This document shows, piece after piece, positions 9,423 through 41,208 of a stretch of 64,000 bases of DNA. The stretch lies in the IMG/VR virus record IMGVR_UViG_3300035703_000008, positions 124,001 through 188,000 of that record; one strand, written 5' to 3'. The position numbers and the translations under genes are program-made. The notes beneath the pieces are model-generated. The model was not told where the DNA came from. It was given only the letters and a program-made list of their open reading frames with translations, and searched no databases. Within the stretch, counting starts at the first letter, position 1. Every line of letters begins with the position of its first letter.

Positions 9423-9426
9423 GCTT

Positions 9427-9434: not shown

Positions 9435-9436
9435 GG

Positions 9437-15890: not shown

Positions 15891-15893
15891 GGA

Positions 15894-16193: not shown

Positions 16194-17953
16194 TACCAGA
16201 ATCCTCCTTTGATGAGATCACCGTTGGCAAATTGCTTGAGGCTGAATTGTTTGCTGACTTGTTCGCGAGTCTGTATGGGCAGCAGGCGGATGCTGACTTC
16301 TAGTCGAGTAGGCACATAAGTGGGCGAGTTGGTGCCCAGGGTAGGCGGTGCTGGAGGTGTGGCCACTGCGCCTGGCTGTGCGTTAATGGAACTGAGGCGC
16401 TGTGTGACGGCATCAAACGGACCAGTGGTAGTGGTTTGGCGTATGCGTTTTTGCAGCAGTCCCGTGGAAGAGATATTGGGACTGCGAGCACGGATGTAGT
16501 CCACGTCCGCGGGTAGATTGTAGTTGAAGCTGGTGATCACGCAGGGATGCAGGTTGAACTGATACTCGCCCAGACCTTGTAGATATACCAAGGGCGGAGG
16601 TGTTCCGCGCTCGGCGTCCTGACCATAGAACATCTTGGTAGCTGATCGGAAAAAGTGTATCACTGCTAGGAGATATTCGGCTTCCTTGGTGTCCTGGGCT
16701 GTGAACGGACACTCGATGGAGATCTCTTCCACGGCGCTGCCTTGATAGAAATAGCCGCGATAGTTGCTGTGCGTGAGATCATAGGGCGTGTATTTTGCTG
16801 TGTAGGCTGTGCTGATTTGCGGAGTGTAAGGGAATACCACACCGTCGGTGTCTTTGAGCGGTTGCAGGATGCCAGGACTGGCAGCATTGTAGAGATAGGT
16901 ACTCAACGGTGCCAGTCTCAGCTTGACACGCCAGTCTCCGTCGTTGGCCTGTTTGCGTTGTTGTTGCAGCACGGCCTGGGCACGAGCACGATCCACAGCG
17001 GCCTGCTGTGCTGCGGCCTGCTCTTCTTGGAGTGCTTGCACATCAGCCAGGCTTTCAGTATTGGTGGGAGTTTCTCCGGGATCGGTCTGTGGATAGGCCG
17101 GGTCATCGTCCACGGGATTGTCTTCGGCCTGTCGCCCTTCTTCGGAGAGTCCAGCAGCGCTGGTCTCGGCTCCGTCTACTTCATAGGGATCAGGCTGCGC
17201 TGTGGGGTTGTCCTGGGCTTGGATATCTTCTTCAGAGATATCACCAGCACCGGCACCGTCTACTTCATACGGATCGGGCTGCGGCGTATCGTTGGCATCG
17301 GCCACAGAGAAATCCACGGGATCGTCTTCTTCGCCATAGGGAGATACACCGTCGGGCGTTCCTCCCAGGAATTCTGAATCAGGAACTTCGCCAGGATCGG
17401 TCTGTGTATAAGGACTGGGCTGATCTATGGGATTGTCTTGGGCCTGGATGTCCTCTTCGGCGATGTCGCCAGCACCGGCACCGTCTACTTCATACGGATC
17501 GGGCTGTGTGGCCGGAGGCGGTGTTGCTACCGAACTGCCCGGAACCGTGTTCTGGGCTTGCTCCTGTGCTGCCTGGCTGGCCGGTTCATTGGGTGTGTTT
17601 AGGGGAACTTCGTTGCCGCTGCCGGGCGGACGAGCCACTTCTTTGAGGATCTGATCATCGACGTAGCGTATGTTGTTCTGTGTTTCGGTGATCTGATTGT
17701 TGGTCTGGGTAAGAGCTTGGCGAGAACTGGAAATCTGGCGATCCAGGGCATCGGCTTCTTGTTCCAGGAGAATGCGCTGTGGATCAGCTGGCGGCAATCG
17801 CTCAATGTTGCGTTCAACCACATCCAGCTGATCTTCGTAGCGAAACACTTCGCTGCTCTGCGTGCGTGCCGTGGCCAGCAGACCATCTAGTCGAACTTGC
17901 AGCTCGGCTTTGGTGGCGTTGTAGCTGTTGATGGTTTCTGCTTGGGTGGCCAT
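16193..17953 (-). CDS. Tail tube initiator/baseplate protein (gp48/gp54-like) with long N-terminal extension
   Basis: C-terminal GVVFPYTPQI...THSNY...FTAQ...EA.YLLA..HF.RS.TKM.YG...GTPPP..L.G.G..F...P.VI.SF domain. Confidence 0.65.
   Translation of the reverse strand: MATQAETINSYNATKAELQVRLDGLLATARTQSSEVFRYEDQLDVVERNIERLPPADPQRILLEQEADALDRQISSSRQALTQTNNQITETQNNIRYVDDQILKEVARPPGSGNEVPLNTPNEPASQAAQEQAQNTVPGSSVATPPPATQPDPYEVDGAGAGDIAEEDIQAQDNPIDQPSPYTQTDPGEVPDSEFLGGTPDGVSPYGEEDDPVDFSVADANDTPQPDPYEVDGAGAGDISEEDIQAQDNPTAQPDPYEVDGAETSAAGLSEEGRQAEDNPVDDDPAYPQTDPGETPTNTESLADVQALQEEQAAAQQAAVDRARAQAVLQQQRKQANDGDWRVKLRLAPLSTYLYNAASPGILQPLKDTDGVVFPYTPQISTAYTAKYTPYDLTHSNYRGYFYQGSAVEEISIECPFTAQDTKEAEYLLAVIHFFRSATKMFYGQDAERGTPPPLVYLQGLGEYQFNLHPCVITSFNYNLPADVDYIRARSPNISSTGLLQKRIRQTTTTGPFDAVTQRLSSINAQPGAVATPPAPPTLGTNSPTYVPTRLEVSIRLLPIQTREQVSKQFSLKQFANGDLIKGGFW
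17244..17506 (-). repeat. Internal direct repeats encoding QPDPYEVDGAGAGDI(A/S)EEDIQAQDNP
   Basis: Identical 38-nt copies at 17244-17281 and 17469-17506; a third partial copy near 17170-17195. Confidence 0.85.
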
Positions 17954-17970
17954 GATCTATCCTTGTGCTT

Positions 17971-17976
17971 TATTTA
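17971..17976 (-). promoter_or_regulatory. Late promoter TAAATA heading the baseplate operon
   Basis: TAAATA, then AAGGA SD, then ATG at 17953. Confidence 0.7.
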
Positions 17977-18014
17977 CCGTGGTCATAAACGGCTAACTTT
18001 ATAGTCAGTGGCCA

Positions 18015-18042
18015 TTGACATCGTGGCCCAATCTGTTATACT
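18015..18042 (+). promoter_or_regulatory. Sigma70-type promoter for the gp55 operon
   Basis: TTGACA-16nt-TATACT with TG extended -10; AGGAG SD before TTG start. Confidence 0.7.
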
Positions 18043-18066
18043 AAGTATGTTTACAGGAGAAGTCAT

Positions 18067-18954
18067 TTGAGCACAACACCACCGCGAGTAAACTATCTCA
18101 ACAACCGTGATCTCCTCAAAGAGATCCATCTCAGCAAAAATACCTATTGCACATTCCGAGATCCCGTAACTGATCATCAATACGACATAATCTTGCCCTC
18201 GGTCACCAAGATCAACCAAAGAACCATAGCCGAGGCACGGAGGAATCGCGCAGCGCGACTTGCCCGAGAAAGTGGTGAAGAGGTCAACGAAAAACGCATC
18301 CCGCACACCGATCTTGTTTTCCGTGTCATGACCTGGGAACACATACCCCAGGCACCCAAGAAACAGCCCAAAACACAGGCCAAAAAGAAAAAGCTCGAAG
18401 ATATCCTAGGCTTTGAAGAGCTGCCCGACGAGGATCCCTTGGCAGATCTCGTCGAAGATATCGTCATCGATACCACTCATGTGCGTGTAAATTTCCCACC
18501 GTTTTGGCATTACCGACTCGACGAAGAAAAAACACCATTTGTGGTAGGCAAAAGCCATTGGCGCGGCGATCTCAGCACTGGGGAGTATTCCAGAGAGCAC
18601 GGTGAAATGACACGCAAACTGGCCATGATGTTCATGAAGCTGTGCGAACGCTATGCCACTCGATCAAACTGGCGCGGCTATACCTACAACGAAGAGATGC
18701 GTGGGCAAGCTCTGCTACAACTCAGCCAGATCGGTCTGCAGTTTGACGAATCAAAGAGCCAAAATCCCTTTGCCTACTACACCGCAGCCATTACCAACTC
18801 GTTTACACGGGTGCTCAACATCGAAAAGAAAAACCAAAATATCAGGGACGACATCTTGGAAATGAACGGACTCAATCCTTCGTGGACTCGTCAGTATGCC
18901 AATGCTGACCGTGGCATGATGAGTGGCCCTGTGACCATCGGTTCTGACGAGTGA
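18067..18954 (+). CDS. Late-transcription sigma factor, T4 gp55-like
   Basis: NYLNNRDLL, RSNWRGYTYNEEM, FDESKSQNPFAYYT....NSF.R.L..EKK motifs; upstream of gp47/gp46 as in T4. Confidence 0.9.
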   Translation: MSTTPPRVNYLNNRDLLKEIHLSKNTYCTFRDPVTDHQYDIILPSVTKINQRTIAEARRNRAARLARESGEEVNEKRIPHTDLVFRVMTWEHIPQAPKKQPKTQAKKKKLEDILGFEELPDEDPLADLVEDIVIDTTHVRVNFPPFWHYRLDEEKTPFVVGKSHWRGDLSTGEYSREHGEMTRKLAMMFMKLCERYATRSNWRGYTYNEEMRGQALLQLSQIGLQFDESKSQNPFAYYTAAITNSFTRVLNIEKKNQNIRDDILEMNGLNPSWTRQYANADRGMMSGPVTIGSDE

Positions 18955-18958
18955 TTAC

Positions 18959-19858
18959 ATGACAACTCTGTTGCATATCACACATCCTGCATTAGATTTA
19001 CAGACAATAGATCCAAGATCGACTTTGATTTCTGGTAGATTGCCTGAAAAACTACCTGATGTCGCACACACATCCCTAGGAGATTTACATGCCGGTGATA
19101 TCATTGATCTAGCCGCTAAATATCACGAATTACAATTTCACGATCAGTTTTTTGATATTGATAGCGATATCTTTCAAGAAACGCAGTTATTATTAAACTT
19201 TTTACAACATCGCAATATAATAAAAAACTTTAAAAAACCTAGTCCTGTTGAATTTTATCAAAATACCGGATACCATCACAAAGATCCTTGTTTATGGGTA
19301 TTTGGGTGTAGTCATTCATACGGGGTTGGGTTAGAACCATTGCAACGATACGGCCAATTACTGGCCGATCGTCTAGGTCTACCATTAATATTAGTTGCTG
19401 AGCCCGGTTCGTCTCTGACTTGGAGTCTAGATCAAATACATCGGTCCGATATCAAAGAATCCGACCTTGTAATTTGGCAGATTACTACCCCTTATAGAAA
19501 ATTAAAGTTTGATGTATCTCCTAAACATGTGATGCTGTCTAGTCGTGCCAGTCATTGTTATCTAGAAGTATTCACGAATCAACAAGTATTTTTTGATCAT
19601 GTGAGTATGATAAGGCAAGGTATTAACTACCTAAGATCAAAACATATTAGATTTGCAATGACATCGTTGGATAGTAAAGATTACTATTATCAGTACTTAA
19701 AAGAGTATACTCGATACCCAGAGTATTGTTATACACCAGAAATATGGAAAGATCGAGCCAGCGATGGTCTTCACCCAGGTCCTTTGAGTAATTCCGCACT
19801 TGCAGATCGTTTGTTTATTCATCTACAATTAGATATTCATACCAAAACAACAACATGA
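18959..19858 (+). CDS. Hypothetical protein with SGNH/GDSL-like domain
   Basis: VFGCSHSYGVG, A.PGSS, terminal DGLHPG; visibly AT-richer than flanks. Confidence 0.6.
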   Translation: MTTLLHITHPALDLQTIDPRSTLISGRLPEKLPDVAHTSLGDLHAGDIIDLAAKYHELQFHDQFFDIDSDIFQETQLLLNFLQHRNIIKNFKKPSPVEFYQNTGYHHKDPCLWVFGCSHSYGVGLEPLQRYGQLLADRLGLPLILVAEPGSSLTWSLDQIHRSDIKESDLVIWQITTPYRKLKFDVSPKHVMLSSRASHCYLEVFTNQQVFFDHVSMIRQGINYLRSKHIRFAMTSLDSKDYYYQYLKEYTRYPEYCYTPEIWKDRASDGLHPGPLSNSALADRLFIHLQLDIHTKTTT

Positions 19859-20871
19859 GCAACCTTTTCCGCAAAGCCATAGTATTCACCGACATCCATT
19901 TTGGGCTCAAATCCAACAGCTTGATACACAATCAAGACTGTGAACGTTTTGTGGACTGGATCATCGCCACAGGCCGGGAGCATGGTTGCGAGACCGGCAT
20001 GTTCCTGGGCGACTGGCACCATCATCGTGCATCGATCAATCTACAGACCCTGAACTTCAGTTTGCAGGCCTTGGAAAAGCTGAGTGCGGCGTTCTCGCAG
20101 TTCTTCTTTATCCCAGGCAATCACGATCTCTACTATCGTGACAAACGTGACATCCATGGTGCAGCCTGGGCCCGTCACTTGCCCAATATCCACGTATGCA
20201 ACGACTGGTTCCAGGAAGGCGATGTCATAATCGCCCCGTGGCTAGTGGGCGATGACCATAAAAAGATTTCGAAGATGTCGGCCAAGTACATGTTTGGACA
20301 CTTTGAGCTACCGCACTTCAAGATGAATGCCATGGTAGAGATGCCGGACCACGGTGAGATACAAGCCGAGCACTTTGGACACTATGACCAAGTGTTTAGT
20401 GGACACTTCCACTTGCGCCAGCACAAAAACAACATCAACTACATCGGCAATGCTTTTCCGCACAACTTCGCCGATGCCGGGGACAGCCAGCGCGGTGCTA
20501 TGATCCTCGAGTGGGGGGCGGAACCGGAGTATCACGCCTGGCCGGACCAACCTCTCTACAATGTCTGGGATCTTAGCCATGTCATTGACAATGCTGAGAA
20601 AATTTTACGCCCGAACATGCATGTCCGAGTACAGCTAGACATCGATATCAGCTACGAAGAAGCCAACTTTATTCGAGAAACATTTGTGCAAAAATATACT
20701 CTGCGAGAGATGGCTTTGATCCCAAACAAGAGATCGGCCCTGGAAGAAGACATGGCACCCGGCGATGTAAAATTTGAATCAGTAGATCAAATCGTTATAG
20801 ATCAGATCACCAAGATTGAAAGCGAATTCTACGATCCTAAATTATTACTACAAATTTACAATACGCTATGA
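19855..20871 (+). CDS. Recombination endonuclease subunit, gp47/Mre11/SbcD-like
   Basis: Metallophosphoesterase motifs DIHFG, GDWHH, GNHD, GHFE, SGHFH. Confidence 0.92.
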   Translation: MSNLFRKAIVFTDIHFGLKSNSLIHNQDCERFVDWIIATGREHGCETGMFLGDWHHHRASINLQTLNFSLQALEKLSAAFSQFFFIPGNHDLYYRDKRDIHGAAWARHLPNIHVCNDWFQEGDVIIAPWLVGDDHKKISKMSAKYMFGHFELPHFKMNAMVEMPDHGEIQAEHFGHYDQVFSGHFHLRQHKNNINYIGNAFPHNFADAGDSQRGAMILEWGAEPEYHAWPDQPLYNVWDLSHVIDNAEKILRPNMHVRVQLDIDISYEEANFIRETFVQKYTLREMALIPNKRSALEEDMAPGDVKFESVDQIVIDQITKIESEFYDPKLLLQIYNTL

Positions 20872-22259
20872 TAGAAATCAAAGATCAAAATGTAGTCATA
20901 GCAGCCATGCCATTGATCGACAGCATGCACGCACCAATGGCGGCACCAGCTGTGCTGAAAGCATCTCTATCTCGTGCCGGCATCAAGTCTACAGCGTTAG
21001 ATCTAAATATTGAAGTATTAGTCAAAGTCCGATCCCACCATGAAGAAAAAGCCATTAGAAAATTCTTCAACAAACAGGAAGCAGAGGACTGGATAGTACA
21101 CGAAATATCCAAGATATTGTTATATTGTGCCAATCGAATTACTGCATTGAAACCCACAGTGATTGCATTGAGTTTGTTGACATTCCAGGCTCAAAATTTT
21201 ACTTTATGGTTATGCCTTTTGTTGCGCCAACTTTGCCCGGATGCAAGAATAGTAATCGGCGGCCCTGGAATAAAAAACCTAGTGGCTAACTTTGATGATA
21301 AGTTCCGAGATCTAGCATTGGAAAAAGGATTGATCGATCATTATATCACCGGAGATGGCGATCAAGCATTGATAGAATATGTAAAAGGCAATTATGACTT
21401 TCCCGGTATCAACACAGACCATTGGGAACCAGTCAAAGATTTAGATTCGTTACCGTATCCAGATTGGTCCGATTATAATTTTTATCTTTATTCGCAAACC
21501 TACATGCCTTTGGTTGATGCCAAAGGCTGCGTGAGAAACTGTGAATTTTGTGATATCATTGAGTTTTGGGAAAAATTCCAGGCTAGAAAAGCTGAAAATA
21601 TTTTCAAAGAAATGTTACATCAGATATCTCAATACGGCTATCGAGATTTTGATTTCAGAAGTAGTTTATCAAACGGCAATCTCAAAGAGTTCAAAAAATT
21701 GCTATCTCTGATGTATGAGTATAATCTATCTAAACCTTACAGACCAGAACAGATTAGCTGGAATGCATCATTTATAGTCAGACAAAAGAGTCAACACCCA
21801 GAATCGATGTGGCAACAAATGGGAGCTACTCATGCTACATTGAGTCTAGGCGTAGAAAGTGTGGTGCCTCACATCAGGCAGGATCTGGGTAAACACTTTG
21901 AAAACGAAGACATCGACTGGCACCTTGAAATGGCTAAAAAATACAATGTCAAGATTATCATGATGATCATCACCGGCTATCCAACTGAAACAAGAGAAGA
22001 TTGGGAATTTACCAAGCAATGGTTCAGAGATCGAGCTCAATATAAAGATATCATGACACGTCTTTTTTTGACCCCGGCTGGCATTTTACCCGGAACTGGC
22101 TTGCATAGGAATTCTGAATCGCATGGTATTATATGGATCGGGAAACCCAATATTGGAAATTGGCAAACTAAAAATATAGGCCGCGAAGAAAGACTAGAGT
22201 ATCATTCAGAATTGGTTTTATTGTGCAAAGATCTAGGATTCAATCTCGATGCTTACTAA
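20868..22259 (+). CDS. Cobalamin-binding radical SAM protein
   Basis: N-terminal B12-binding-like domain (IVIGGP, GDGD), KGCVRNCEFC CxxxCxxC, GVES, ITGYPTETREDW. Confidence 0.85.
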   Translation: MIEIKDQNVVIAAMPLIDSMHAPMAAPAVLKASLSRAGIKSTALDLNIEVLVKVRSHHEEKAIRKFFNKQEAEDWIVHEISKILLYCANRITALKPTVIALSLLTFQAQNFTLWLCLLLRQLCPDARIVIGGPGIKNLVANFDDKFRDLALEKGLIDHYITGDGDQALIEYVKGNYDFPGINTDHWEPVKDLDSLPYPDWSDYNFYLYSQTYMPLVDAKGCVRNCEFCDIIEFWEKFQARKAENIFKEMLHQISQYGYRDFDFRSSLSNGNLKEFKKLLSLMYEYNLSKPYRPEQISWNASFIVRQKSQHPESMWQQMGATHATLSLGVESVVPHIRQDLGKHFENEDIDWHLEMAKKYNVKIIMMIITGYPTETREDWEFTKQWFRDRAQYKDIMTRLFLTPAGILPGTGLHRNSESHGIIWIGKPNIGNWQTKNIGREERLEYHSELVLLCKDLGFNLDAY

Positions 22260-22653
22260 TAATCTGACATTGACGTTCTGTTCCGAGAAGCGGTCTCATG
22301 ATCTAGCTATAACGCTGAAAGATCGGAATAATACAATAATCAATACGATTACATTTGAAGACGATACAAAGAAATCAACAACATTCGATTTATCGTTTCC
22401 TAATACATTGAAAATCAAACTAACAAATGCCGCAGATGGTAATTTTTCAGTGCATCTCGAAAGTGTGAAATTATCTGGATTATACCTGACAGATCAAATC
22501 CTTGATCAGATATGTCATGTACACTTTCTGGATTCAGATACCACATTGGTATCGCGGACATGGAATCAGTCTGGCGTAATATCGATTGACTTCTTTGCGG
22601 CTGATTGGATACAATATCATTTACTATACGGAAACAAGATTACTAAGTCATGA
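22249..22653 (+). CDS. Hypothetical protein
   Basis: 134 aa, overlaps both neighbours, AT-rich like the radical SAM gene. Confidence 0.6.
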   Translation: MLTNNLTLTFCSEKRSHDLAITLKDRNNTIINTITFEDDTKKSTTFDLSFPNTLKIKLTNAADGNFSVHLESVKLSGLYLTDQILDQICHVHFLDSDTTLVSRTWNQSGVISIDFFAADWIQYHLLYGNKITKS

Positions 22654-24413
22654 TCCAGATCAAAGACCTTACAGTCAAAAACTTTATGAGCGTAGGCAAT
22701 GCCACACAGGCCGTCAACTTTGATCGAAAAGATCTCACCTTGGTACTGGGCGAAAACTTGGATCTCGGTGGCGATGGTAGCAGGAACGGCACGGGCAAAA
22801 CCACAATCATCAATGCTCTTTCGTATGCCCTATACGGACAAGCCTTGACTAACATCCGACGAGATAATCTCATCAACAAGACCAATGGCAAAAACATGTT
22901 GGTGAGTTTGGACTTCTCTGTGAACAGTCAGGACTATCGTGTGGAACGAGGCCGTAAGCCAAACATCCTCAAATTTTATGTCAATTCAGAAGAAAAACAA
23001 GCGTCCGACGACAGCCAAGGTGACAGTCGTGAAACACAGGATGCCATAGAATCTGTGCTGGGTATGACGCACGATATGTTCCGGCATATCTTGGCCCTCA
23101 ATACCTACACTGAACCATTCCTAAGCCTCAAGGCCAATGACCAGCGTGCCATCATCGAGCAACTGCTAGGTATCACGCTACTAAGTGAGCGTGCCGAAAA
23201 GATCAAAGAACTCAATCGTGCCACCCGAGATGCCATCGCACAAGAAGAATTCCGTATCCGTGCTGTGCAGGAAGCCAATGTCAGGATCGAAGAGCAGATC
23301 GTTAGTCTAGAAAAGCGCCGTGACCTTTGGCTACGGAAACAACGAGAAGATTGTGCCAATCTAGAATCAGCTATATCCGCGCTGGAGCACATCGATATCG
23401 AAGCCGAAGTACAGGCACACCGAGATTTAGAACTGTTCCACAGTCGCAAGAAACAGATCGACGAGCATCAGAAGTGGGTGCGACAAATCGATCTCGACGA
23501 CGCCAAGCTAGAAAAAGATCAAGCCAAGCTACAGCGAGACATTGATGCGCTGCGAGAACATCGTTGCCATGCCTGTGGACAAGAATTGCACGATAGCAAG
23601 CAAGACGAAATCCTGGCCGAGAAACAAAAGAACTTGCAAGAGATCGTGCTGCAACTCTTGGCCAACAGCACCCAGAGGATCGAACATCTCAACGAGATCA
23701 GCGACCTTGGCGAACTTGGTGCAGCACCGCAGGTATTCTACGACGATCTTGAACAAGCACTGGGGCATAAAAACAGCATCGATGGCCTGCGTCGAGATCT
23801 TGCTAATCGACAGGCCGAAACTGATCCATACACCGAACAAATCGCCGACATGCGCGGTCAAGCCTTGCAAGAGGTCACTTATGACACACTCAATGAACTC
23901 ACAAGGGTACAGGAACACCAAGACTTCTTGCTCAAGCTCTTGACCAACAAGGATTCGTTTGTACGCAAGAAGATCATTGATCAGAATCTTTCTTATCTCA
24001 ATGCCCGACTCACTCACTATCTAGATCGGATCGGTCTTCCGCACCAAGTGGCTTTCCAAAACGATCTCTCCGTGGAAATCACTGAACTGGGCAGGGATCT
24101 AGACTTTGACAACCTCAGTCGTGGCGAGCGTAACCGTCTCATACTCTCCATGTCATGGGCATTCCGAGATGTTTGGGAAAGCCTGTATTCGCCCATCAAT
24201 GTACTGTTCATCGACGAACTCATCGATTCGGGCATGGACACAGCCGGCATGGAATCCAGCCTAGCTCTTTTGAAGAAGATGAGCCGAGAAAGAAACAAAA
24301 GCATTTGGCTGGTGAGCCATCGCGACGAGTTGGCTGGGCGTGTAGGTAACATCCTGCGCGTGGTCAAAGAAAACGGTTTTACTTCCTATAACATAGACGT
24401 GGACATCGCATGA
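22650..24413 (+). CDS. Recombination ATPase subunit, gp46/Rad50/SbcC-like
   Basis: Walker A NGTGKTT, zinc hook CHAC, signature LSRGE, Walker B LFIDE, SH motif. Confidence 0.93.
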   Translation: MIQIKDLTVKNFMSVGNATQAVNFDRKDLTLVLGENLDLGGDGSRNGTGKTTIINALSYALYGQALTNIRRDNLINKTNGKNMLVSLDFSVNSQDYRVERGRKPNILKFYVNSEEKQASDDSQGDSRETQDAIESVLGMTHDMFRHILALNTYTEPFLSLKANDQRAIIEQLLGITLLSERAEKIKELNRATRDAIAQEEFRIRAVQEANVRIEEQIVSLEKRRDLWLRKQREDCANLESAISALEHIDIEAEVQAHRDLELFHSRKKQIDEHQKWVRQIDLDDAKLEKDQAKLQRDIDALREHRCHACGQELHDSKQDEILAEKQKNLQEIVLQLLANSTQRIEHLNEISDLGELGAAPQVFYDDLEQALGHKNSIDGLRRDLANRQAETDPYTEQIADMRGQALQEVTYDTLNELTRVQEHQDFLLKLLTNKDSFVRKKIIDQNLSYLNARLTHYLDRIGLPHQVAFQNDLSVEITELGRDLDFDNLSRGERNRLILSMSWAFRDVWESLYSPINVLFIDELIDSGMDTAGMESSLALLKKMSRERNKSIWLVSHRDELAGRVGNILRVVKENGFTSYNIDVDIA

Positions 24414-24988: not shown

Positions 24989-25507
24989 ATGCCATCACCA
25001 AGCAAAGCCAAAGGCAACTCGTTTGAACGACAAACTGCAGATTTTCTCACCAATCTCTACGGCGAAAAGTTCATGCGGGTGCCGGGCAGCGGTGCGTACA
25101 TTGGTGGCAAAAACACACACCGCAAGCAGTTCCTACACGAAGGCCAGATACGCAGTTTCAAAGGGGATATCATCCCCGGCGAAAGTTTTCCGCGTTTCAA
25201 TGCCGAGTGCAAATCCTACAAAGACTTTCCTTTCCATCAACTTTTTTCTGGCTCAGTTAAGATCCTGGACTCATGGATTGATCAATGCGTGGATGTCGCC
25301 GACGACGGTGACTTCAACATCATATTCATGAAGTTCAACAGAAAAGGCACCTTCGTAGCCGTTCAGGCCCAGCCCAACACTTCCCAACTAATTTTTACTC
25401 GGCATTTCAACTACACTTCCGGGCTTCGCGGACATTGGATGATCATGGATCATGACATGTTCTGGGAGCTCAACTCTGACACAGTCAAGGCAATCTGCAA
25501 GGCATAA
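24989..25507 (+). CDS. Holliday junction resolvase-like PD-(D/E)xK nuclease
   Basis: SKAKGNSFER...RVPGSGA...GDII...ECK pattern of Hjc-like resolvases. Confidence 0.75.
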   Translation: MPSPSKAKGNSFERQTADFLTNLYGEKFMRVPGSGAYIGGKNTHRKQFLHEGQIRSFKGDIIPGESFPRFNAECKSYKDFPFHQLFSGSVKILDSWIDQCVDVADDGDFNIIFMKFNRKGTFVAVQAQPNTSQLIFTRHFNYTSGLRGHWMIMDHDMFWELNSDTVKAICKA

Positions 25508-25509
25508 CA

Positions 25510-25964
25510 GGCAGTAAGGGCTCGCACAGGCCGATTTCTTGTGCCCTAGACCTGGACTTCGAGTCGCAGGGATGGAAGACCCACCGCGCCAGTGGGCACT
25601 CAACCACTACCCGCAAGGATGAAGATGGCAAAGACCTGCCGTTTGGTTGTTTGAACAGGATATAAAAGGCCCAATGAGGGGAGCAAAACCCCAGGCACAT
25701 GCGTGGTGACGGCGTACTACACATGTGTTGCCGTTGTGATAAGACGGAGTGAGCAGGTACCGGACAACCGCCTGCTTGGAACAAGTGCGTTCCGTAGCTC
25801 TAACGCTGTGTGACTGTGCAACTCGGATGATACCAGTTTTTTCTTAGCCCTTTGCTGGGCTAAGTGTGACCGCTTAATCTGGATGATACTGATATCTCGC
25901 TTGCGCTCGAAATAAATCAGTGATGAGCGCAAGCGAAATCACTAGAACTGCGCAGCAGTTCTCT
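25510..25964 (+). ncRNA. Candidate large structured non-coding RNA (~455 nt), family not recognised
   Basis: Largest intergenic gap in a tightly packed genome; about 14 consecutive stems with G-U pairs on the + strand, a GCAA tetraloop and a duplicated hairpin module. Confidence 0.7.
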
Positions 25965-25976: not shown

Positions 25977-27230
25977 ATGAACGTTGACAAAAGCACTTTC
26001 TGTGCTGCTCCTTGGTTCCAAATCAAAAATACCACGCTTGGAAGTTACTGTAGCTGTTGCGAGATAGACCACGACAAAAGCACTTTCTCGGGCAACAAAG
26101 ATTTCGCTTGGCCCACGCATCTACCATCGCACTGGAACAACAGCGATTATGCTCGATACCTTAGGTCTGAGCTCACCAATGGTGTGCGTCTCCCCGAATG
26201 TCACAAGTGTTGGAGCAAAGAAGATGCTGGACAACAAAGTCTTCGACAAACTATCAATGACACCGTGGCTGGCAATCGACCTTTTGAATCTAGTTGGATG
26301 CAATCCTACTTTAGAAAAAAGCAAGATTACGAACATGATTTACTTTTGGCTGCCGATGTACAGGTCACCAATCTTTGCAACTTTGGCTGTGTGATGTGTG
26401 AGCCGGGTAGCAGCAGCCATCTCTATCGAAGATGGCGGAGAGATCAGGACCATCCGTTGATAAAAAAACAGTTGATGATCTTCCCCAACGGCTATCTTGA
26501 TCAGGTGAAAGAAACATACATCAACAGAAACAACTACGAGCTACTGCAACACGTGATAGATCAATCTCCGCGGTACTTGAAGATCATAGGCGGTGAGCCT
26601 TTGTTGGATCAGCAGTTGATGTCTGTGTTGTGCAATCAGCTTCCCGAAGTCAAATCAAAAATCAAACTTTACATCACTACCAATGGGAGCCAAGATCTCT
26701 GCCACGCACAACAACGGTTGTCGGGTTACCAGGAAATTTTTTGGGTAGTCAGTCTAGAGTCCACGGGCAAACTGCAGGACTATGTGAGAAAAGGCAGCGT
26801 ATGGTCCGAGATCGAGCACAACATTGACAGGTTTGTAAGCGAACACAGCAGTCAACACCTTTACATAGCCTATGTGATACAGAGTCTCACATTGGCTGGG
26901 CTGCCAACATTGTTGGAATGGGCCCAGCAACGCAACATTCCAGTGGCTACCAGTTTGCTGGCCAAACCTGAATTCATGGATGTTAGATCGTTGCCCACGG
27001 AGATGAAATCAAAGTTGATTGATCAATTGTCGCAGGCAACAAAGTATTCGATACCGCTGGAGATACAAAATCCAGCATCTGTCAATATTGCAGGGTTGTG
27101 CGAGCTCATCGGGCGCACCCAGTACGATAGATCTGCCATGTTGGATCTACGAGAGTGGTTGGATTGGTACGATCCCGACCAGCAATGGCGAGACATCATT
27201 CCCGAGTGGGCACCATATTTCTCGGAGTAA
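25977..27230 (+). CDS. Radical SAM protein with N-terminal SPASM/twitch-like Cys cluster
   Basis: FCAAPW..CSCC..ECHKCW..E, NLCNFGCVMC, GGEP, TTNG. Confidence 0.85.
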   Translation: MNVDKSTFCAAPWFQIKNTTLGSYCSCCEIDHDKSTFSGNKDFAWPTHLPSHWNNSDYARYLRSELTNGVRLPECHKCWSKEDAGQQSLRQTINDTVAGNRPFESSWMQSYFRKKQDYEHDLLLAADVQVTNLCNFGCVMCEPGSSSHLYRRWRRDQDHPLIKKQLMIFPNGYLDQVKETYINRNNYELLQHVIDQSPRYLKIIGGEPLLDQQLMSVLCNQLPEVKSKIKLYITTNGSQDLCHAQQRLSGYQEIFWVVSLESTGKLQDYVRKGSVWSEIEHNIDRFVSEHSSQHLYIAYVIQSLTLAGLPTLLEWAQQRNIPVATSLLAKPEFMDVRSLPTEMKSKLIDQLSQATKYSIPLEIQNPASVNIAGLCELIGRTQYDRSAMLDLREWLDWYDPDQQWRDIIPEWAPYFSE

Positions 27231-27755
27231 TCAGTCATAGTCAACGAGACTGACCAGCGCGATACCTTGCTCGGTGACACGGCGTCGACCAGGCAAGAAA
27301 TCTAGATTGGCGATCACGCCGGCTGCGAGATGATCCACGGCAAAGTGTTGTCTCAAGATTGATGCCACAGCCAGCACGGTACCGCCAGTGGCGATCACGT
27401 CATCGACGATGAAAGGACGATCGCCGATCTGCGCTGATTGTTGAATTTCAATGGTGTCTGAGCTGTATTCAGTGTCGTAATCGGCTGAATATACAGCTCC
27501 GGGTAACTTGCCTTTTTTGCGAGCCAGCACCAAGGGAAATCCGTGTGTGCGTGCCAGGATAGCACCCATGACGAACCCACGGCTTTCAACAGCCACGATG
27601 CTGGTAGCACGATGTGCTTTCACATATTTTGACATCTCGGTGCAGCAATGATCCAGCACATGTGGCGTGTTGAACACTTGATTGAGATCGAGGAAATCAA
27701 CACCTTTTTTTGGCCAGTCTTTTACTGTGAGTATGTTGTCTCTGATGTTGATCAT
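27231..27755 (-). CDS. apt: Adenine phosphoribosyltransferase
   Basis: DWPKKGVDFLD, ESRGF, ARKKGKLPG, EYS, PRPP-binding IVDDVIATGGT; start placed at the ATG overlapping the upstream stop. Confidence 0.9.
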   Translation of the reverse strand: MINIRDNILTVKDWPKKGVDFLDLNQVFNTPHVLDHCCTEMSKYVKAHRATSIVAVESRGFVMGAILARTHGFPLVLARKKGKLPGAVYSADYDTEYSSDTIEIQQSAQIGDRPFIVDDVIATGGTVLAVASILRQHFAVDHLAAGVIANLDFLPGRRRVTEQGIALVSLVDYD

Positions 27756-28084
27756 AGTTGGTCGGGCCAATCTCTGAAAAGTGCATGCTGGATGTCACCG
27801 GCAACAAACTGGTTGAAACTTTTGTGTTTGGTCTCGAGCTCGCCTTCTTGTGGCACCACTCTGCGGAAAGCATCATCCATTTGGGCCATGTTTTTGAACT
27901 CCATGAGGATCATCCATTCGGGCATGTCTGCGATTGAGCGGAAGCCCATCTTGCAGCGTGTGATACGATAACTTTCCATCCGTCCTTCAGAGACCAAATG
28001 ATCAAAGAAACTACGCATGCCGTTGACCCAGTCCAGGTCAGATATGTCGCCTTCTTTGTTGGCCCATATAGTGTAAAGATCCAT
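27752..28084 (-). CDS. DUF6614-like small ferredoxin-fold protein
   Basis: MDLYTIW..., YRITRCKMGF, EW.I.MEF..MAQMDDAF, ALFRDWPD pattern recalled from DUF6614 proteins. Confidence 0.55.
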   Translation of the reverse strand: MDLYTIWANKEGDISDLDWVNGMRSFFDHLVSEGRMESYRITRCKMGFRSIADMPEWMILMEFKNMAQMDDAFRRVVPQEGELETKHKSFNQFVAGDIQHALFRDWPDQL

Positions 28085-28518
28085 TATTTCAGTGGTCCTA
28101 ATATTTCAAATCCCTGTATGTCAAGCATATAGGGTTCTACCGATTCAAAGTACATGAATCGATAACCGCGATCACGATAGATCGCGCACTCGTTTTCCAA
28201 ACTTCGTATGCCCAGCCTTAACCGGGGATTTCGATAGTCCCAGGCAAAGTGATCGCTGAGTATGCTTTCTGCGTCCCAGATGCGATACATGCTCCAGGCC
28301 ACCAAGTGATCCCGATCATAATAACCAATCAATTCAGTGTTGGGTGCAGTGAGTCGCCCAGGTACCATGGGCATCACGCTCTGGAAATGCTTGTGGACGC
28401 AGTAGTCTCGGTACACTCGTTGCACATCGTTCACGGGCACTGGGTCTAGGATCTGTGCCGGGATGTCGTTGACATAGTGCGTGTCCTGGAGATTGATGCG
28501 ACCAAACTGCCAGCTCAT
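28084..28518 (-). CDS. GNAT-fold protein resembling the C-terminal domain of Arg/Leu-tRNA-protein transferases (ATE1/Bpt)
   Basis: GYYD.D.LVAWS, FAWDY...RLRLGI.SL..EC...R..GY.FMY resembles ATE_C YDP....SLG....L.EI......G..Y.YLG. Confidence 0.55.
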   Translation of the reverse strand: MSWQFGRINLQDTHYVNDIPAQILDPVPVNDVQRVYRDYCVHKHFQSVMPMVPGRLTAPNTELIGYYDRDHLVAWSMYRIWDAESILSDHFAWDYRNPRLRLGIRSLENECAIYRDRGYRFMYFESVEPYMLDIQGFEILGPLK

Positions 28519-29012
28519 GATCTGGGATCCTCTCGACCTTCAAACAGCACCGCAAGATAGTCTTCGGACCACCCATCGTAGTAACCTTTGGCAGCGATGA
28601 GTCGTGCAAAGTCGTTGAGTTTTGACAAAGGTTGTACAAAAGTGATGGCCCAGGTGCCTTGATTCATGCACACCCCGTTGATCTCTTCGTGATCGTCGGG
28701 GTGATCTGCCAGCGCGATGATGTCGCGACCGAGTAAAAAACCTGTGTTGAGCTCGCGCACCTGGCGATTGAATTCATCGGCGGTGAAATCTTTGGGATCA
28801 TAGATGTAACCAATCACCATGAATTCACCAAGATCGATCTTTTGTAGATCGGTATAGGGATCAATGATGCCTGGCCGTAGATCCAGTTGGCGATCTAGTC
28901 TAGCTTTCCGAGCATACGGACACGGCGGCCAGCCTTGGAGTCCGGGATTGGGCTGCTCAACGAACCCGGTGATCCAGTTTAAAACATCTTGTTTGGCTTG
29001 TACGAAATCCAT
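28515..29012 (-). CDS. DUF1415-like protein
   Basis: W...FVE.P......PCPYARKA, ADHPD motifs. Confidence 0.5.
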   Translation of the reverse strand: MDFVQAKQDVLNWITGFVEQPNPGLQGWPPCPYARKARLDRQLDLRPGIIDPYTDLQKIDLGEFMVIGYIYDPKDFTADEFNRQVRELNTGFLLGRDIIALADHPDDHEEINGVCMNQGTWAITFVQPLSKLNDFARLIAAKGYYDGWSEDYLAVLFEGREDPRS

Positions 29013-29014
29013 GA

Positions 29015-29254
29015 TTAGAAAAACGGCAGTCCTGATTTTTTAGTGGTATCGAGATTTTCCTTGATGATACCATTGACTATGTCGCGATCGCTCCAGCTCA
29101 TCTGCATGGCTTCGCTGATAGTGACGCCTCCGCGCATGAACCAACACAATTTCAGCGTCTCGGTCTTGATCGCTTTGGCCTCCTTTTCCAGTCGTTCTAT
29201 GTACTTGACCACGCCCGCGGGGTCTAGGATCAGGAGGCGGCTTCGAAAAAATTT
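29015..29254 (-). CDS. gp51-like baseplate/tail assembly chaperone ORF, probably reached by -1 frameshift from the gp26-like gene
   Basis: -1 frame open through the slippery site; LCWFMRGG.T..EAM.MS..DR..IIKENL.TTKKSGLPFF; no convincing SD/start of its own. Confidence 0.65.
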   Translation of the reverse strand, partial: KFFRSRLLILDPAGVVKYIERLEKEAKAIKTETLKLCWFMRGGVTISEAMQMSWSDRDIVNGIIKENLDTTKKSGLPFF

Positions 29255-30066
29255 GCCATGTCCAGGGTAAACTGTTGCTGGTACTCGTTGCTGCAAGCGG
29301 TACACTTCATCTTGAGCGGTTTCAGCTCGCCGGTTTCTTTCACGGCCACGATGTGATCTCGGATCTTGGCAAACATCTTGCGATCACAGTTGGCCAACCA
29401 TTCGGCGATGTGCTCGGGATCCTCGACCTGTGCTGCAGGAGTCTGCACCAATCTGATGTTTTGTGCCAGAGCTTGGGTAGTGATCTCAGTGATCTTTTTC
29501 AGCATGGCTCCCATCTGTGCCAGTCGCTGCTGATCTTCCATGTCAGCAGCACCAAGGGCCTGCAGGGTCTTTTGTTCTTCAAACTGGCGCATGCTGTTTT
29601 CATTGATCTGGCGATAGGTCATGGGCCGGAAATACAGCTTGAGATCGCCCAGTTCCAGGAATTCGTCGTAGTCGGGCCGGCCAATGTTTTCCAGGATCTG
29701 ACGCAGGTCCAGGGCGTAATCTTCTTCGTTTTCGCATTTGGGACAGCGTGTGGTGATCTCCATCTCATGACCGTAAGTGGCGATGCGTATGGCCGTGATC
29801 ACGGTGTCGATGTCCATGCTGGGCATTTTCCAAGCATCTCGGATGTTGGGCACACAGCTTTGGATCACCGACGGCACCGCTGATCCGTTGAACAGGGCAT
29901 CAGGTGTGCGATAAGTGATCTCGTCCAGGGTGGTCATGGGCATCACGGGATATTCGCCGTTGGCAGTGGGTTCCAACGCGCCTTCGGGATAGTAACGGCC
30001 ATCGCTGGGCAGGCGGATATAGATCGCCGGTTGGCGGAAATACTGCTTGAGTGGGTTGTTTGGCAT
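29230..30066 (-). CDS. Baseplate hub assembly protein, T4 gp26-like
   Basis: NPLKQYFRQP..YI.LPS.G, MT..DEI, D.D...AIRIATYG, CPKC and CTAC zinc motifs, ends NFFEAAS; start placed at ATG 30066. Confidence 0.8.
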   Translation of the reverse strand: MPNNPLKQYFRQPAIYIRLPSDGRYYPEGALEPTANGEYPVMPMTTLDEITYRTPDALFNGSAVPSVIQSCVPNIRDAWKMPSMDIDTVITAIRIATYGHEMEITTRCPKCENEEDYALDLRQILENIGRPDYDEFLELGDLKLYFRPMTYRQINENSMRQFEEQKTLQALGAADMEDQQRLAQMGAMLKKITEITTQALAQNIRLVQTPAAQVEDPEHIAEWLANCDRKMFAKIRDHIVAVKETGELKPLKMKCTACSNEYQQQFTLDMANFFEAAS

Positions 30067-30081
30067 GGTTTTAGGTTTGGG

Positions 30082-30108
30082 TAAATAAGATGCAGCGAAA
30101 TATTTATA
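30082..30108. promoter_or_regulatory. Face-to-face late promoters: TAAATA (+, 30082-30087) and TATAAATA (-, 30101-30108)
   Basis: Motifs read directly in the 55-nt gap between divergent genes. Confidence 0.65.
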
Positions 30109-41072: not shown

Positions 41073-41208
41073 AAAAATATTTATTCCTGGATTATTTTTC
41101 GTAAATCTATGTTAAATACTATCAACGTATTCTGCGTTTTATGCGGCGATTAATACCCACCGCGTACCGGATAGAACCCGGATCGGACTTCTTTTAAGGA
41201 GAAAACAA

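What the first reader, a model, noticed from the sequence alone, without database searches (positions are those of the whole stretch)
27231..29012. Coupled module: DUF1415-like + aminoacyl-tRNA-protein-transferase-like + DUF6614-like + APRT
Seen: four genes with overlapping stop/start codons directly downstream of the late gp26/51 operon. The 144-aa protein resembles only the C-terminal GNAT domain of ATE1/Bpt; the preceding protein has a PCPY motif. Known: ATE1/Bpt move Arg/Leu from aminoacyl-tRNA to acidic N-termini for N-degron proteolysis; APRT salvages adenine. Inference: a phage protein-tagging or tRNA-dependent modification system, possibly a split transferase. It lies ~1.3 kb from the candidate RNA with T-loop-like modules; a link is speculative.
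Basis: partly seen in the sequence, partly recalled or inferred. Interest (0 to 1): 0.7.

Follow-up and report, generated by a model that had tools for sequence, protein, structure and literature searches.

The report
Phage heme-protein plus truncated arginyltransferase cassette
A large uncultured phage carries three tightly coupled genes of unknown function: a predicted heme-thiolate oxygenase, a stripped-down relative of the enzymes that move amino acids from tRNA onto proteins, and a small DUF6614 protein; they travel together in dozens of related phages, often next to an arginine-using amidinotransferase, which points to undescribed arginine/guanidino chemistry, not protein tagging for degradation.

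Summary
The four genes are real. Their stop and start codons overlap, and they follow a T4-type baseplate-hub gene behind a TATAAATA late-promoter motif.

Only three genes form a conserved unit:
- **A165** (28515-29012) has a DUF6875/DUF1415 "sandwich" fold. That family is the thiolate-heme cytochrome P422 family, and the nearest solved structure is the guanidine N-hydroxylase AglA. Its Cys31-Pro32 is invariant.
- **B144** (28084-28518) is the GNAT core of Bpt/ATE1 without the N-terminal acceptor domain. It is not an ordinary acetyl-CoA GNAT.
- **C110** (27752-28084) is a DUF6614 protein.

A sits beside B in 43 of 43 loci with enough flank, across at least three genomic contexts and arrangements. 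B is followed by C or by an amidinotransferase homologue. The APRT gene recurs in only one other locus, so it is a lineage-specific neighbour.

B144 keeps the acidic residue that specifies arginine in ATE1. In this clade, however, the catalytic lysine is methionine, with fixed Q90H, G125E and Y42H changes in or near the active site, and the gene is still under purifying selection.

My best reading (confidence about 0.4) is a late-expressed tailoring pathway centred on arginine or guanidino groups. The precedent is the valanimycin pairing of an N-hydroxylase with an aminoacyl-tRNA transferase. N-degron tagging, a split transferase and a link to the nearby RNA (Rfam Polynucleobacter-1) are not supported. 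The substrate is unknown.

The parts
30101..30108 (-). TATAAATA motif (the T4 late-promoter consensus), 34 nt upstream of the hub gene's ATG. It probably drives hub, p96, A165, B144, C110 and APRT as one late transcript.
   Evidence: only 2 matches in 64 kb (0.46 expected by chance). No sigma-70-like site or minus-strand terminator-like hairpin lies inside 27231-30100, apart from a weak promoter-like match at 27751-27780. Co-transcription is inferred, not shown.
29230..30066 (-). Baseplate hub protein (T4 gp26-type). The likely start is ATG 30066; the ORF list gives TTG 30114.
   Evidence: Pfam T4_baseplate 4.8e-16 and PHROG 150 'baseplate hub' 3.6e-18. Sequence read.
29015..29305 (-). p96, a 96-aa protein of unknown function. 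It always lies between the hub gene and A165 in hub-context loci.
   Evidence: A remnant of it accompanies the A165 homologue in the Oscillatoria sp. PCC 10802 chromosome (L052).
28515..29012 (-). A165: a DUF6875/DUF1415-superfamily 'sandwich'-fold protein and predicted thiolate-heme oxygenase, with an invariant Cys31-Pro32.
   Evidence: AF2 pLDDT 95.7. Single stand-out solved match is AglA 9ub3, Z 7.1 against 4.0 for the next. AFDB clusters: DUF6875 at E 3.8e-6 and DUF1415 at 1.6e-3. Atlas TM 0.84. Homologues hit the PF21780 N-terminus at E 1e-4 to 7e-3. The L059 bridge passes both Pfam cut-offs. Cys-Pro is invariant down to 23% identity.
28084..28518 (-). B144: the minimal ATE/Bpt-type GNAT core (the aminoacyl-tRNA transferase fold) without the ATE_N domain. 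This is the 'M-type' variant, with Met131 at the catalytic-lysine position.
   Evidence: AF2 pLDDT 95.6. Swiss-Prot AFDB top hits are Bpt. VIA top hits are the MprF/aaPGS and FemX C-lobes, Z 14-15. A1 against A3 gives hhalign 99.9%. A3 against solved ATE1 gives E 5e-8, including the YK motif. Residue mapping.
27752..28084 (-). C110: a DUF6614 protein and the most conserved member of the cassette. Its fold and role are unknown.
   Evidence: Pfam PF20319 5e-22, 78.5 bits. It is 57-92% identical in loci where A165 is 46-64%. There are 23 invariant columns, many of them polar. dN is 0.08-0.20 with saturated dS.
27231..27755 (-). Adenine phosphoribosyltransferase. It is coupled to C110 by an ATGA overlap here but is not a conserved member of the cassette.
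   Evidence: NCBIfam NF002636 152.8 bits against a cut-off of 125. Pfam Pribosyltran. The PRPP motif FIVDDVIATGGT is visible. It is present next to the cassette only in L011.

Best explanation
A165, B144 and C110 form a phage-specific enzyme cassette. In many relatives an amidinotransferase joins it, and this genome encodes one elsewhere.

**Proposed working**
1. A165 is a thiolate-heme oxygenase of the P422/YqcI-YcgG type. It hydroxylates a nitrogen or carbon of the substrate, most plausibly a guanidino or amine group.
2. The amidinotransferase, where present, uses L-arginine to build or supply the guanidino group.
3. B144 is an ATE/Bpt-type catalytic core that keeps the acidic pocket residue which reads arginine in ATE1. 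It binds an arginyl or basic aminoacyl donor (aminoacyl-tRNA in the lysine-bearing 'K-type' relatives) and couples it to the oxidised acceptor. In this window's 'M-type' clade the active site has been rebuilt (K131M, G125E, Q90H, Y42H), so the chemistry is probably derived and not classical aminoacyl transfer.
4. C110 carries out or assists a further step that I cannot name.

In this lineage the cassette is expressed late, with the baseplate-hub genes.

**Shown**
- Gene order and coupling.
- Folds and family relationships.
- Residue states.
- Co-occurrence across loci.
- Purifying selection.

**Inferred**
- Heme binding by A165.
- Identity of the donor.
- The order of steps.
- Late co-transcription.

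**Unknown**
- Whether the acceptor is a virion protein, a nucleic acid or a small molecule.
For: **Coupling and co-occurrence**
- Stop and start codons overlap.
- A is adjacent to B in all 43 loci with enough flank. These cover hub-TMP context, islands with IF1-, IscA- and SOD-like ORFs (read from sequence, not searched), and an arrangement with A, E and C on the opposite strand.
- B is followed by C (35 loci) or directly by the amidinotransferase (6 loci).
- The amidinotransferase is inserted between A and B, between B and C, after C, or in place of C. It matches AGAT, HsvA, SxtG and StrB1 at E 1.4e-12, with the catalytic His and Cys kept.
- This genome has its own copy at C1:94314-95339.

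**A165**
- AglA is a Cys-ligated heme guanidine N-hydroxylase (PMC12866846).
- DUF6875 is the thiolate-heme cytochrome P422 family, with an RxGxVCP motif (bioRxiv 10.64898/2025.12.11.692455).
- A165 has an invariant GWPPCP.

**B144**
- It is Bpt/ATE-like by structure and by profile.
- Glu110 aligns with klAte1 Glu277, the arginine-specifying residue, which is Gln in the leucine-transferring Bpt (PMC9351520).
- Tyr130 aligns with the essential Tyr303.

**Selection and precedent**
- dN/dS is 0.05-0.2, with saturated dS.
- An N-hydroxylase paired with an aminoacyl-tRNA transferase is known from valanimycin: VlmH/R with VlmA (PMC11705231).
Against: - No substrate, product or activity is known for any of the three proteins.
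- Heme binding by A165 rests on fold and one Cys-Pro motif. Its own sequence gives no Pfam hit at E up to 1, and the P422 Trp-binding motifs are not conserved.
- B144 lacks the lysine whose K304A change kills klAte1, so it may not transfer aminoacyl groups at all.
- The amidinotransferase is not adjacent in this genome. It lies 57 kb away and is only 32% identical to the adjacent type.
- The complex prediction gave no verdict.
- The arginine theme rests on three separate family-level analogies.
Confidence: 0.4

Rival explanations
1. B144 is a Bpt/ATE1-like N-terminal aminoacyl transferase that tags host or phage proteins for N-degron (ClpS/ClpAP) proteolysis, and A165 supplies the missing N-terminal half (a split transferase).
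For: B144 is structurally closest to Bpt. It keeps the Tyr303 and Glu277 equivalents. A165 and B144 are always adjacent, with an ATGA overlap.
Against: - The ATE_N domain, with the acidic-N-terminus pocket (Arg80, Tyr25, Tyr87; PMC9351520), is absent. The match begins at Bpt residue about 60-70.
- A165 has a different fold, the DUF6875/AglA sandwich, and shows no ATE_N match.
- The catalytic lysine is methionine in this clade.
- The complex prediction gave no verdict.
Confidence: 0.08
2. In the M-type clade B144 is a non-catalytic or ligand-sensing subunit (a pseudoenzyme). It binds arginine, aminoacyl-tRNA or a tRNA 3' end and regulates or targets the heme enzyme A165. The catalysis is done by A165, and by the amidinotransferase where present.
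For: The catalytic Lys is replaced by Met, together with co-ordinated G125E, Q90H and Y42H changes that are fixed in all 47 M-type sequences. The donor pocket (S106, E110) and Tyr130 are retained. Purifying selection is strong.
Against: The replacement residues (two His and one Glu at or near the beta4-beta5 cleft) look like a new catalytic or metal site and not like decay. K-type and M-type proteins occupy the same gene neighbourhoods, which suggests the same overall role.
Confidence: 0.2
3. The three genes are unrelated 'moron' genes that merely share an insertion hot spot downstream of the hub operon, with no common pathway.
For: APRT, the radical SAM gene, the SDR gene and the PDDEXK gene next to the cassette vary from locus to locus, so the region is a variable island. 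A165-family genes occur alone in isolated phages (HMO-2011, CRP-345/810, S-SCSM2R) and in bacteria.
Against: A-B adjacency holds in 43 of 43 loci, across different contexts, strand arrangements and 40-85% identity. Start and stop codons overlap. The amidinotransferase inserts inside the cassette without separating it.
Confidence: 0.1
4. B144 is an ordinary acetyl-CoA-dependent GNAT acetyltransferase.
For: It has the GNAT fold, and Foldseek also lists acetyl- and myristoyl-CoA enzymes such as VipF, Eis and NMT.
Against: - No Pfam acetyltransferase family matches at E up to 1.
- The CoA pyrophosphate motif Q/R-x-x-G-x-G/A is replaced by the ATE-type L-R-L-G-I-R-S.
- The matches are to the second lobes of tandem GNAT enzymes; I did not check in the structures which lobe binds CoA.
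- Swiss-Prot matches are almost exclusively Bpt.
- The profile chain leads to ATE1 only.
Confidence: 0.05

Closest known systems
Bpt (aspartate/glutamate leucyltransferase) and eukaryotic ATE1 arginyltransferase (Pfam ATE_N + ATE_C)
   Same: B144 has the same GNAT core. TM by query is 0.72-0.81 to Bpt models. A profile chain reaches solved ATE1 at E 5e-8. It shares the W-D-x-x-P...LG..S...E motif, the tyrosine before the catalytic lysine, and the acidic residue at klAte1 Glu277.
   Different: - It has no ATE_N domain, so it lacks the Cys-rich region and the acidic-N-terminus pocket.
- The catalytic lysine is methionine in this clade, with fixed Q90H, G125E and Y42H changes.
- It is always paired with a heme-type protein and DUF6614.
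- It was found only on phage or phage-like contigs.
Cytochrome P422 (DUF6875) and the YqcI/YcgG heme N-hydroxylases (AglA, DcsA); DUF1415
   Same: A165 has the alpha/beta sandwich with a four-stranded sheet. It has an invariant Cys-Pro near the N-terminus, where P422 (RxGxVCP, Cys58) and AglA (Cys44) ligate heme.
   Different: - It is shorter, at 165 aa against 180-300.
- The motif is GWPPCP and not RxGxVCP.
- The P422 Trp-binding motifs SBR1 and SBR2 are absent, and only an SBR3-like MNQG is present.
- A165 itself gives no Pfam hit.
- No redox partner was identified.
Valanimycin VlmH/VlmR + VlmA, and other tRNA-dependent tailoring transferases (Sba18/Sbb17, FemX, MprF/aaPGS)
   Same: This is a pairing of an N-hydroxylase with a GNAT-fold aminoacyl-tRNA-dependent transferase that acylates the hydroxylated small molecule (PMC11705231). 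The MprF and FemX C-lobes are the best solved structural matches to B144.
   Different: In valanimycin the hydroxylase is a flavoenzyme and not a heme protein, and the transferase has a tandem GNAT architecture. The phage cassette adds DUF6614 and often an amidinotransferase. No product is known.
L-arginine:glycine amidinotransferase family (AGAT, HsvA, SxtG, StrB1)
   Same: The roughly 375-aa protein inserted in the cassette in related phages, and the copy at C1:94314-95339 of this genome, match the family's C-terminal catalytic region. The His and Cys are conserved in the cassette-adjacent copy aligned; one search gives the match for this genome's copy (E 6.5e-16).
   Different: There is no Pfam hit, identity is low, the acceptor is unknown, and the gene is not inside the finding's coordinates.

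Membership tests
ATE/Bpt aminoacyl-tRNA-protein transferases | Pfam ATE_C match above the gathering score | tested here: not met
   14.5 bits against a cut-off of 25, E 0.056. Longer relatives of 225-262 aa do pass.
ATE/Bpt aminoacyl-tRNA-protein transferases | Homology of the GNAT core, by profile and by structure | tested here: met
   A1 against A3 gives hhalign 99.9%, E 1.4e-36. A3 against solved ATE1 gives E 5e-8. Swiss-Prot AFDB top hits are Bpt, TM 0.72-0.81.
ATE/Bpt aminoacyl-tRNA-protein transferases | N-terminal ATE_N domain with the acceptor (acidic N-terminus) pocket | tested here: not met
   B144 aligns from Bpt residue about 60-70 onward. No ATE_N hit. A165 is not ATE_N-like.
ATE/Bpt aminoacyl-tRNA-protein transferases | Catalytic lysine (klAte1 Lys304, FemX Lys305) | tested here: not met
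   Met131 in B144 and in 116 of 120 close homologues. Lys in 27 of 27 distant 'K-type' relatives. K304A is inactive (PMC9351520).
ATE/Bpt aminoacyl-tRNA-protein transferases | Tyr preceding the lysine (klAte1 Tyr303) and the acidic donor-pocket residue (Glu277) | tested here: met
   Tyr130 is invariant. Glu110 is present in 85-100% of the family.
ATE/Bpt aminoacyl-tRNA-protein transferases | Use of aminoacyl-tRNA as donor | not testable with these tools
   Needs an in vitro assay.
Acetyl-CoA-dependent GNAT acetyltransferases | CoA pyrophosphate-binding motif Q/R-x-x-G-x-G/A after beta4, and Pfam Acetyltransf matches | tested here: not met
   The sequence there is L100-R-L-G103-I-R105. No acetyltransferase family at E up to 1.
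Cytochrome P422 (DUF6875) / DUF1415 thiolate-heme proteins | Pfam PF21780 or PF07209 above cut-off | tested here: not met
   A165 gives no hit. Homologues score 16.8-22.8 bits against a cut-off of 24.5. The bridging homologue L059 passes both, at 40.7 and 37.7 bits.
Cytochrome P422 (DUF6875) / DUF1415 thiolate-heme proteins | Sandwich fold: a four-stranded sheet flanked by helices | tested here: met
   AF2 model. DUF6875 clusters at E 3.8e-6. Atlas TM 0.84. AglA Z 7.1 over 141 residues.
Cytochrome P422 (DUF6875) / DUF1415 thiolate-heme proteins | Conserved heme-ligating Cys in a ...CP motif | tested here: met
   Cys31-Pro32 is invariant in A2, A5 and A6. The exact RxGxVCP spacing is not kept (GWPPCP).
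Cytochrome P422 (DUF6875) / DUF1415 thiolate-heme proteins | Trp-binding motifs SBR1 to SBR3 | tested here: not met
   Only an SBR3-like M116-N-Q-G119 is present. SBR1 and SBR2 are not recognisable in A2 or A5. Motifs are from the bioRxiv preprint 10.64898/2025.12.11.692455.
Cytochrome P422 (DUF6875) / DUF1415 thiolate-heme proteins | Heme b binding and oxygenase activity | not testable with these tools
   Needs expression and spectroscopy.
DUF6614 (PF20319) | Pfam match above cut-off over the full length | tested here: met
   78.5 bits against a cut-off of 25; residues 1-109 against profile positions 1-107 of 116.
Adenine phosphoribosyltransferase | NCBIfam equivalog above cut-off, and the PRPP-binding motif | tested here: met
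   NF002636 152.8 bits against a cut-off of 125. The motif VDDVIATGGT is visible.

The most novel reading that the evidence does not exclude
Abundant freshwater and subsurface T4-like jumbo phages encode an undescribed tailoring pathway with four parts:
- a miniature P450-like (P422/AglA-type) heme-thiolate N-oxygenase;
- a repurposed ATE/Bpt-fold enzyme that has swapped its catalytic lysine for a new His/His/Glu site;
- an amidinotransferase;
- DUF6614.

Together they would install a new arginine-derived or N-hydroxyguanidino modification. The target would be a baseplate or virion protein, a nucleic acid or a small molecule. Aminoacyl-tRNA or arginine would serve as a building block.
Probability: 0.25. 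Interest if true: 0.85.

Novelty: new variant of a known kind. Interest (0 to 1): 0.62.

Why it matters
ATE1/Bpt-type transferases are known only as N-degron enzymes, and the P422 and YqcI/YcgG heme-thiolate families were described only in 2025. This cassette strictly couples a truncated ATE/Bpt core to such a heme protein and to DUF6614. It is represented by hundreds to thousands of metagenomic sequences: 508 B144-family and 1100 A165-family proteins in the database of clusters at 90% identity, and an Atlas cluster of 3698 members that is 99% viral. It would be the first functional context for DUF6614. It would also be a second functional context for the ATE fold, and a case of aminoacyl-tRNA-type or arginine chemistry recruited by phages and expressed with baseplate genes. 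The natural K-type/M-type pair offers a ready-made experiment on how the ATE active site can be rebuilt.

Tried and rejected
- **Complex prediction (A165 + C110 + B144):** score 0.01, no verdict. This is not evidence either way.
- **Alignment-based locus searches:** two failed for lack of a conserved stretch. P0248 found nothing in viral contigs.
- **GenBank phages:** no DNA match to the region and no protein match for B144 or C110. A165 has only distant stand-alone homologues. The genes next to it in HMO-2011 are unrelated to the amidinotransferase and to C110.
- **C110 supplying the lost lysine in trans (M-type only with C):** rejected. K-type B also occurs with C in L044-46 and L050-51.
- **DNA-hypermodification link:** no TGT/DpdA or thymidylate-synthase family in the contig, which is only about 60% complete. 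Left open.
- **PF21780 search of the genome:** no match at E up to 1.
- **PDB sequence searches:** the A165 and C110 profiles found nothing useful. Foldseek against PDB found nothing for A165.
- **Druad1 (anti-Druantia, 44 aa):** it was annotated 'DUF6614' in bioRxiv 10.1101/2024.04.14.589459. I set it aside because it is less than half the domain length and its authors found no BLAST homologues.
- **The 152-aa gene upstream of P0271:** it is not an A165 relative.
Full report
**Setting.** The window is positions 124001-188000 of a single 208,932-bp viral contig, estimated about 60% complete. It was assembled from a subsurface metagenome. It is a T4-like large phage, and relatives occur on contigs of 320-374 kb. 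No GenBank phage matches the region at the DNA level.

**The observation.** Four minus-strand ORFs are present:

| Name | Coordinates | Length |
|---|---|---|
| A165 | 28515-29012 | 165 aa |
| B144 | 28084-28518 | 144 aa |
| C110 | 27752-28084 | 110 aa |
| PRTase | 27231-27770 | 179 aa as listed |

The junctions read as follows. A165/B144 overlap as ATGA. B144/C110 overlap as TAATG. C110/PRTase overlap as ATGA if the PRTase starts at ATG 27755 and not at the listed TTG 27770. Upstream lie p96 (29015-29305), whose stop is two bases before A165's ATG, and a baseplate-hub gene (Pfam T4_baseplate 4.8e-16, PHROG 150).

A TATAAATA motif, the T4 late-promoter consensus, lies 34 nt before the hub gene's ATG at 30066. 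It is one of only two such motifs in 64 kb. No minus-strand terminator-like site interrupts the run of genes. Late co-transcription with the hub genes is therefore plausible, but it is inferred.

**B144.** Several lines of evidence agree.
- *Direct family search.* Pfam gives only a sub-threshold ATE_C match, 14.5 bits against a cut-off of 25.
- *Exhaustive HMMER search.* It found 93 relatives. These include 225-262-aa proteins that pass ATE_C and match B144 with their C-terminal two-thirds.
- *Profile comparisons.* The B144 family profile (A1) matches the profile of these long relatives (A3) at 99.9% probability, E 1.4e-36. A3 in turn hits only solved ATE1 structures, at E 5e-8. A1 alone already ranks five ATE1 entries first, at E 0.012-0.034.
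- *Structure.* The AF2 model is confident (pLDDT 95.6). Against Swiss-Prot AlphaFold models, nearly all of the top 30 matches are Bpt. TM by query is 0.72-0.81, aligned to Bpt residues about 60-240. Against solved structures the best Z-scores (14-15) are to the C-terminal GNAT lobes of MprF/aaPGS and FemX, which both depend on aminoacyl-tRNA.
- *Acetyl-CoA signature.* No acetyltransferase Pfam family matches. The CoA-binding Q/R-x-x-G-x-G/A motif is replaced by an ATE-type L-R-L-G-I-R-S.

**Residue-level reading of B144.** I used the klAte1 study (PMC9351520) and the alignments.
- *Donor pocket.* klAte1 Ser255, Ser273, Glu277 and Tyr289 correspond to B144 Ser88, Ser106, Glu110 and Met122.
- *Arginine-specifying residue.* Glu277 gives ATE1 its arginine specificity, and the leucine-transferring Bpt has Gln there. 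Its equivalent Glu110 is kept in 85-100% of the phage family.
- *Essential tyrosine.* Tyr303 corresponds to the invariant Tyr130.
- *Catalytic lysine.* Lys304 (K304A is dead; it is equivalent to FemX Lys305) is Met131 in B144. It is also Met in 116 of 120 close homologues and in every locus at 60% identity or more. More distant relatives, at about 35-48% identity, keep Lys.
- *Fixed differences.* A comparison of 27 K-type and 47 M-type sequences shows Y42H, Q90H, L124F, G125E and K131M.
- *Location of the changes.* By the klAte1 mapping, position 125 is the backbone neighbour of the lysine, and position 90 is two residues along beta4 from a pocket serine. Those changes therefore lie in the active site.
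- *Selection.* The M-type is under purifying selection, with dN/dS of 0.09-0.19.

This looks like a rebuilt active site and not a decayed one. I cannot say what chemistry it supports.

B144 also lacks the whole ATE_N domain, which in ATE1 forms the acidic-N-terminus pocket (Arg80, Tyr25, Tyr87).

**A165.**
- *Sequence searches.* There is no Pfam or NCBIfam hit.
- *Solved structures.* The AF2 model is confident (pLDDT 95.7). Foldseek finds nothing in the PDB. An exhaustive structural scan gives one stand-out match, AglA (9ub3), at Z 7.1 over 141 residues; the next hit is at 4.0.
- *What AglA is.* It is a YqcI/YcgG-family enzyme with a "sandwich" fold, and its heme is ligated by Cys44. It N-hydroxylates guanidine groups (PMC12866846).
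- *Predicted structures.* AlphaFold clusters and the ESM Atlas place A165 with DUF6875 and DUF1415 proteins: E 3.8e-6 and 1.6e-3, and TM up to 0.84.
- *What DUF6875 is.* It was renamed cytochrome P422 in a 2025 preprint. These are thiolate-ligated heme b enzymes with an RxGxVCP motif that hydroxylate tryptophan (bioRxiv 10.64898/2025.12.11.692455).
- *Sequence bridges.* A165 homologues hit the N-terminal, Cys-containing part of PF21780 at E 1e-4 to 7e-3. One alphaproteobacterial homologue, L059, passes both the PF21780 and PF07209 cut-offs.
- *The cysteine.* Cys31-Pro32, in GWPPCPYAR, is invariant down to 23% identity.

I conclude that A165 is a small member of this thiolate-heme superfamily. 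Heme binding itself is inferred. The P422 Trp-binding motifs are not conserved, so the substrate differs.

A165 is not an ATE_N equivalent, so the split-transferase idea has no support.

**C110 and APRT.** C110 is a clear DUF6614 protein (78.5 bits) and the most conserved of the three. It has many invariant polar residues. I could not model it, and PDB sequence search gives nothing. The PRTase passes an NCBIfam APRT equivalog model.

**Co-occurrence.** I fetched 32 IMG/VR loci with B144, seven more with K-type queries, ten genome-collection loci with an A165-family profile and several short metagenomic contigs.
- *A with B.* A165 and B144 homologues are adjacent in all 43 loci with enough flank.
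- *C.* C110 is present in 35 loci. In the six with enough flank that lack it, an amidinotransferase homologue directly follows B.
- *Contexts.* The contexts differ between loci:
  - tape-measure/hub/p96 followed by A-B-C;
  - islands whose ORFs read like IF1, IscA and superoxide dismutase (by eye, not searched);
  - an arrangement with B on one strand and A, E and C on the other.
- *APRT.* It occurs next to the cassette only in L011.
- *"Bacterial" hits.* The hits that carry A-B-C are phage-like contigs, with hub and tape-measure genes, binned into MAGs. Genuine chromosomes carry A165 homologues alone: Oscillatoria sp. PCC 10802 and Bdellovibrionia.
- *Isolated phages.* They have only distant, stand-alone A165 homologues.

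**The amidinotransferase.** A protein of about 375 aa recurs at varying positions: between A and B, between B and C, after C, or in place of C. It has no Pfam hit. It matches AGAT, HsvA, SxtG and StrB1 at E down to 1.4e-12, with the catalytic His and Cys aligned. This genome has a 341-aa homologue at C1:94314-95339 (E 6.5e-16 to AGAT). That copy lies 57 kb from the cassette, beside a carbamoyltransferase and a radical SAM/SPASM gene.

**Synthesis.** Three independent family-level clues point to arginine or guanidino chemistry:
- the amidinotransferase uses arginine as donor;
- the nearest solved relative of A165 hydroxylates guanidines;
- B144 retains the acidic residue that reads arginine in ATE1.

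A hydroxylase paired with an aminoacyl-tRNA-dependent GNAT transferase has a precedent in valanimycin biosynthesis. There VlmH/R make a hydroxylamine, and VlmA esterifies it with seryl-tRNA (PMC11705231). I therefore favour a late-expressed tailoring pathway over N-degron tagging, at confidence about 0.4. The acceptor is unknown. The position next to baseplate genes here, and next to structural genes for A165 homologues in HMO-2011 and S-SCSM2R, makes a virion protein one candidate. That is speculation.

**The RNA.** The candidate RNA is Rfam Polynucleobacter-1 (RF01718, 118 bits) at 25519-25652 on the plus strand, 1.6 kb from the APRT end and convergent with the cassette. It lies 0.4-2.1 kb beyond the cassette in four of six hub-context loci and in none of six loci with other contexts. 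This is lineage synteny and not an obligatory link.

**Limits.** There is no biochemical evidence. The complex prediction gave no verdict. No RNA-seq run holds the region. The contig is incomplete, so the absence of partner genes proves nothing.

Noticed in passing
window 25519-25652 (+): Full-length Rfam Polynucleobacter-1 RNA (RF01718, 118 bits), just downstream of a PDDEXK/RusA-like gene (24989-25507). The same RNA recurs in L005, L010, L012 and L013 at 0.4-2.1 kb from the cassette. So this orphan sRNA family is carried by these phages.
   Followed up: partly
window 41123-41211 (+): Rfam freshwater-2 RNA motif (RF02980, 68.8 bits against a gathering score of 49.9).
   Followed up: no
window 25977-27230 (+): Twitch-domain radical SAM protein (NCBIfam N_Twi_rSAM, 222 bits). 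It converges on the APRT gene with no spacer between the two stop codons.
   Followed up: no
window 30101-30108 (-): TATAAATA (the T4 late-promoter consensus) in the divergent gap between the tape-measure gene and the hub gene. It implies that the hub gene starts at ATG 30066 and not at the listed TTG 30114.
   Followed up: partly
G000:C1:92000-101000 (L037): A second cluster of tailoring-type genes outside the window: an amidinotransferase homologue (L037:6314-7339), a carbamoyltransferase (8103-9584, minus strand), a radical SAM/SPASM protein (11483-12793, minus strand) and two unassigned proteins of 370 and 386 aa.
   Followed up: partly
L052 (Oscillatoria sp. PCC 10802, NZ_KB235948.1 around 3.247 Mb): A cyanobacterial chromosome carries an intact A165 homologue (43% identity, CPY motif). 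It is preceded by a remnant of the phage p96 gene. This suggests transfer from a related phage and may be a clue to the host.
   Followed up: no
L050, L051 (Haliscomenobacter sp. MAG, contigs of 183 and 148 kb): Two contigs binned in one MAG each carry tape-measure, hub, p96 and A-B(K-type)-C. They are probably phage contigs, so this is either a clue to the host or a binning artefact.
   Followed up: no
L023-L027 around the cassette: In this arrangement the cassette is flanked by two radical SAM genes, a PP-loop ATPase (TilS/QueC-like N-terminus) and an Asp/Asn beta-hydroxylase-like protein. These are further tailoring-type neighbours.
   Followed up: partly
window 10001-18000 against 18001-24000: A sharp composition change: GC 0.55 with AT skew about -0.19, then GC 0.43-0.45 with positive AT skew.
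   Followed up: no
G000:C1:49115-66733: Thirteen tRNA genes, including tRNA-Arg(TCT). L036 has an eight-tRNA cluster, also with tRNA-Arg(TCT), 4.5 kb upstream of its cassette.
   Followed up: no
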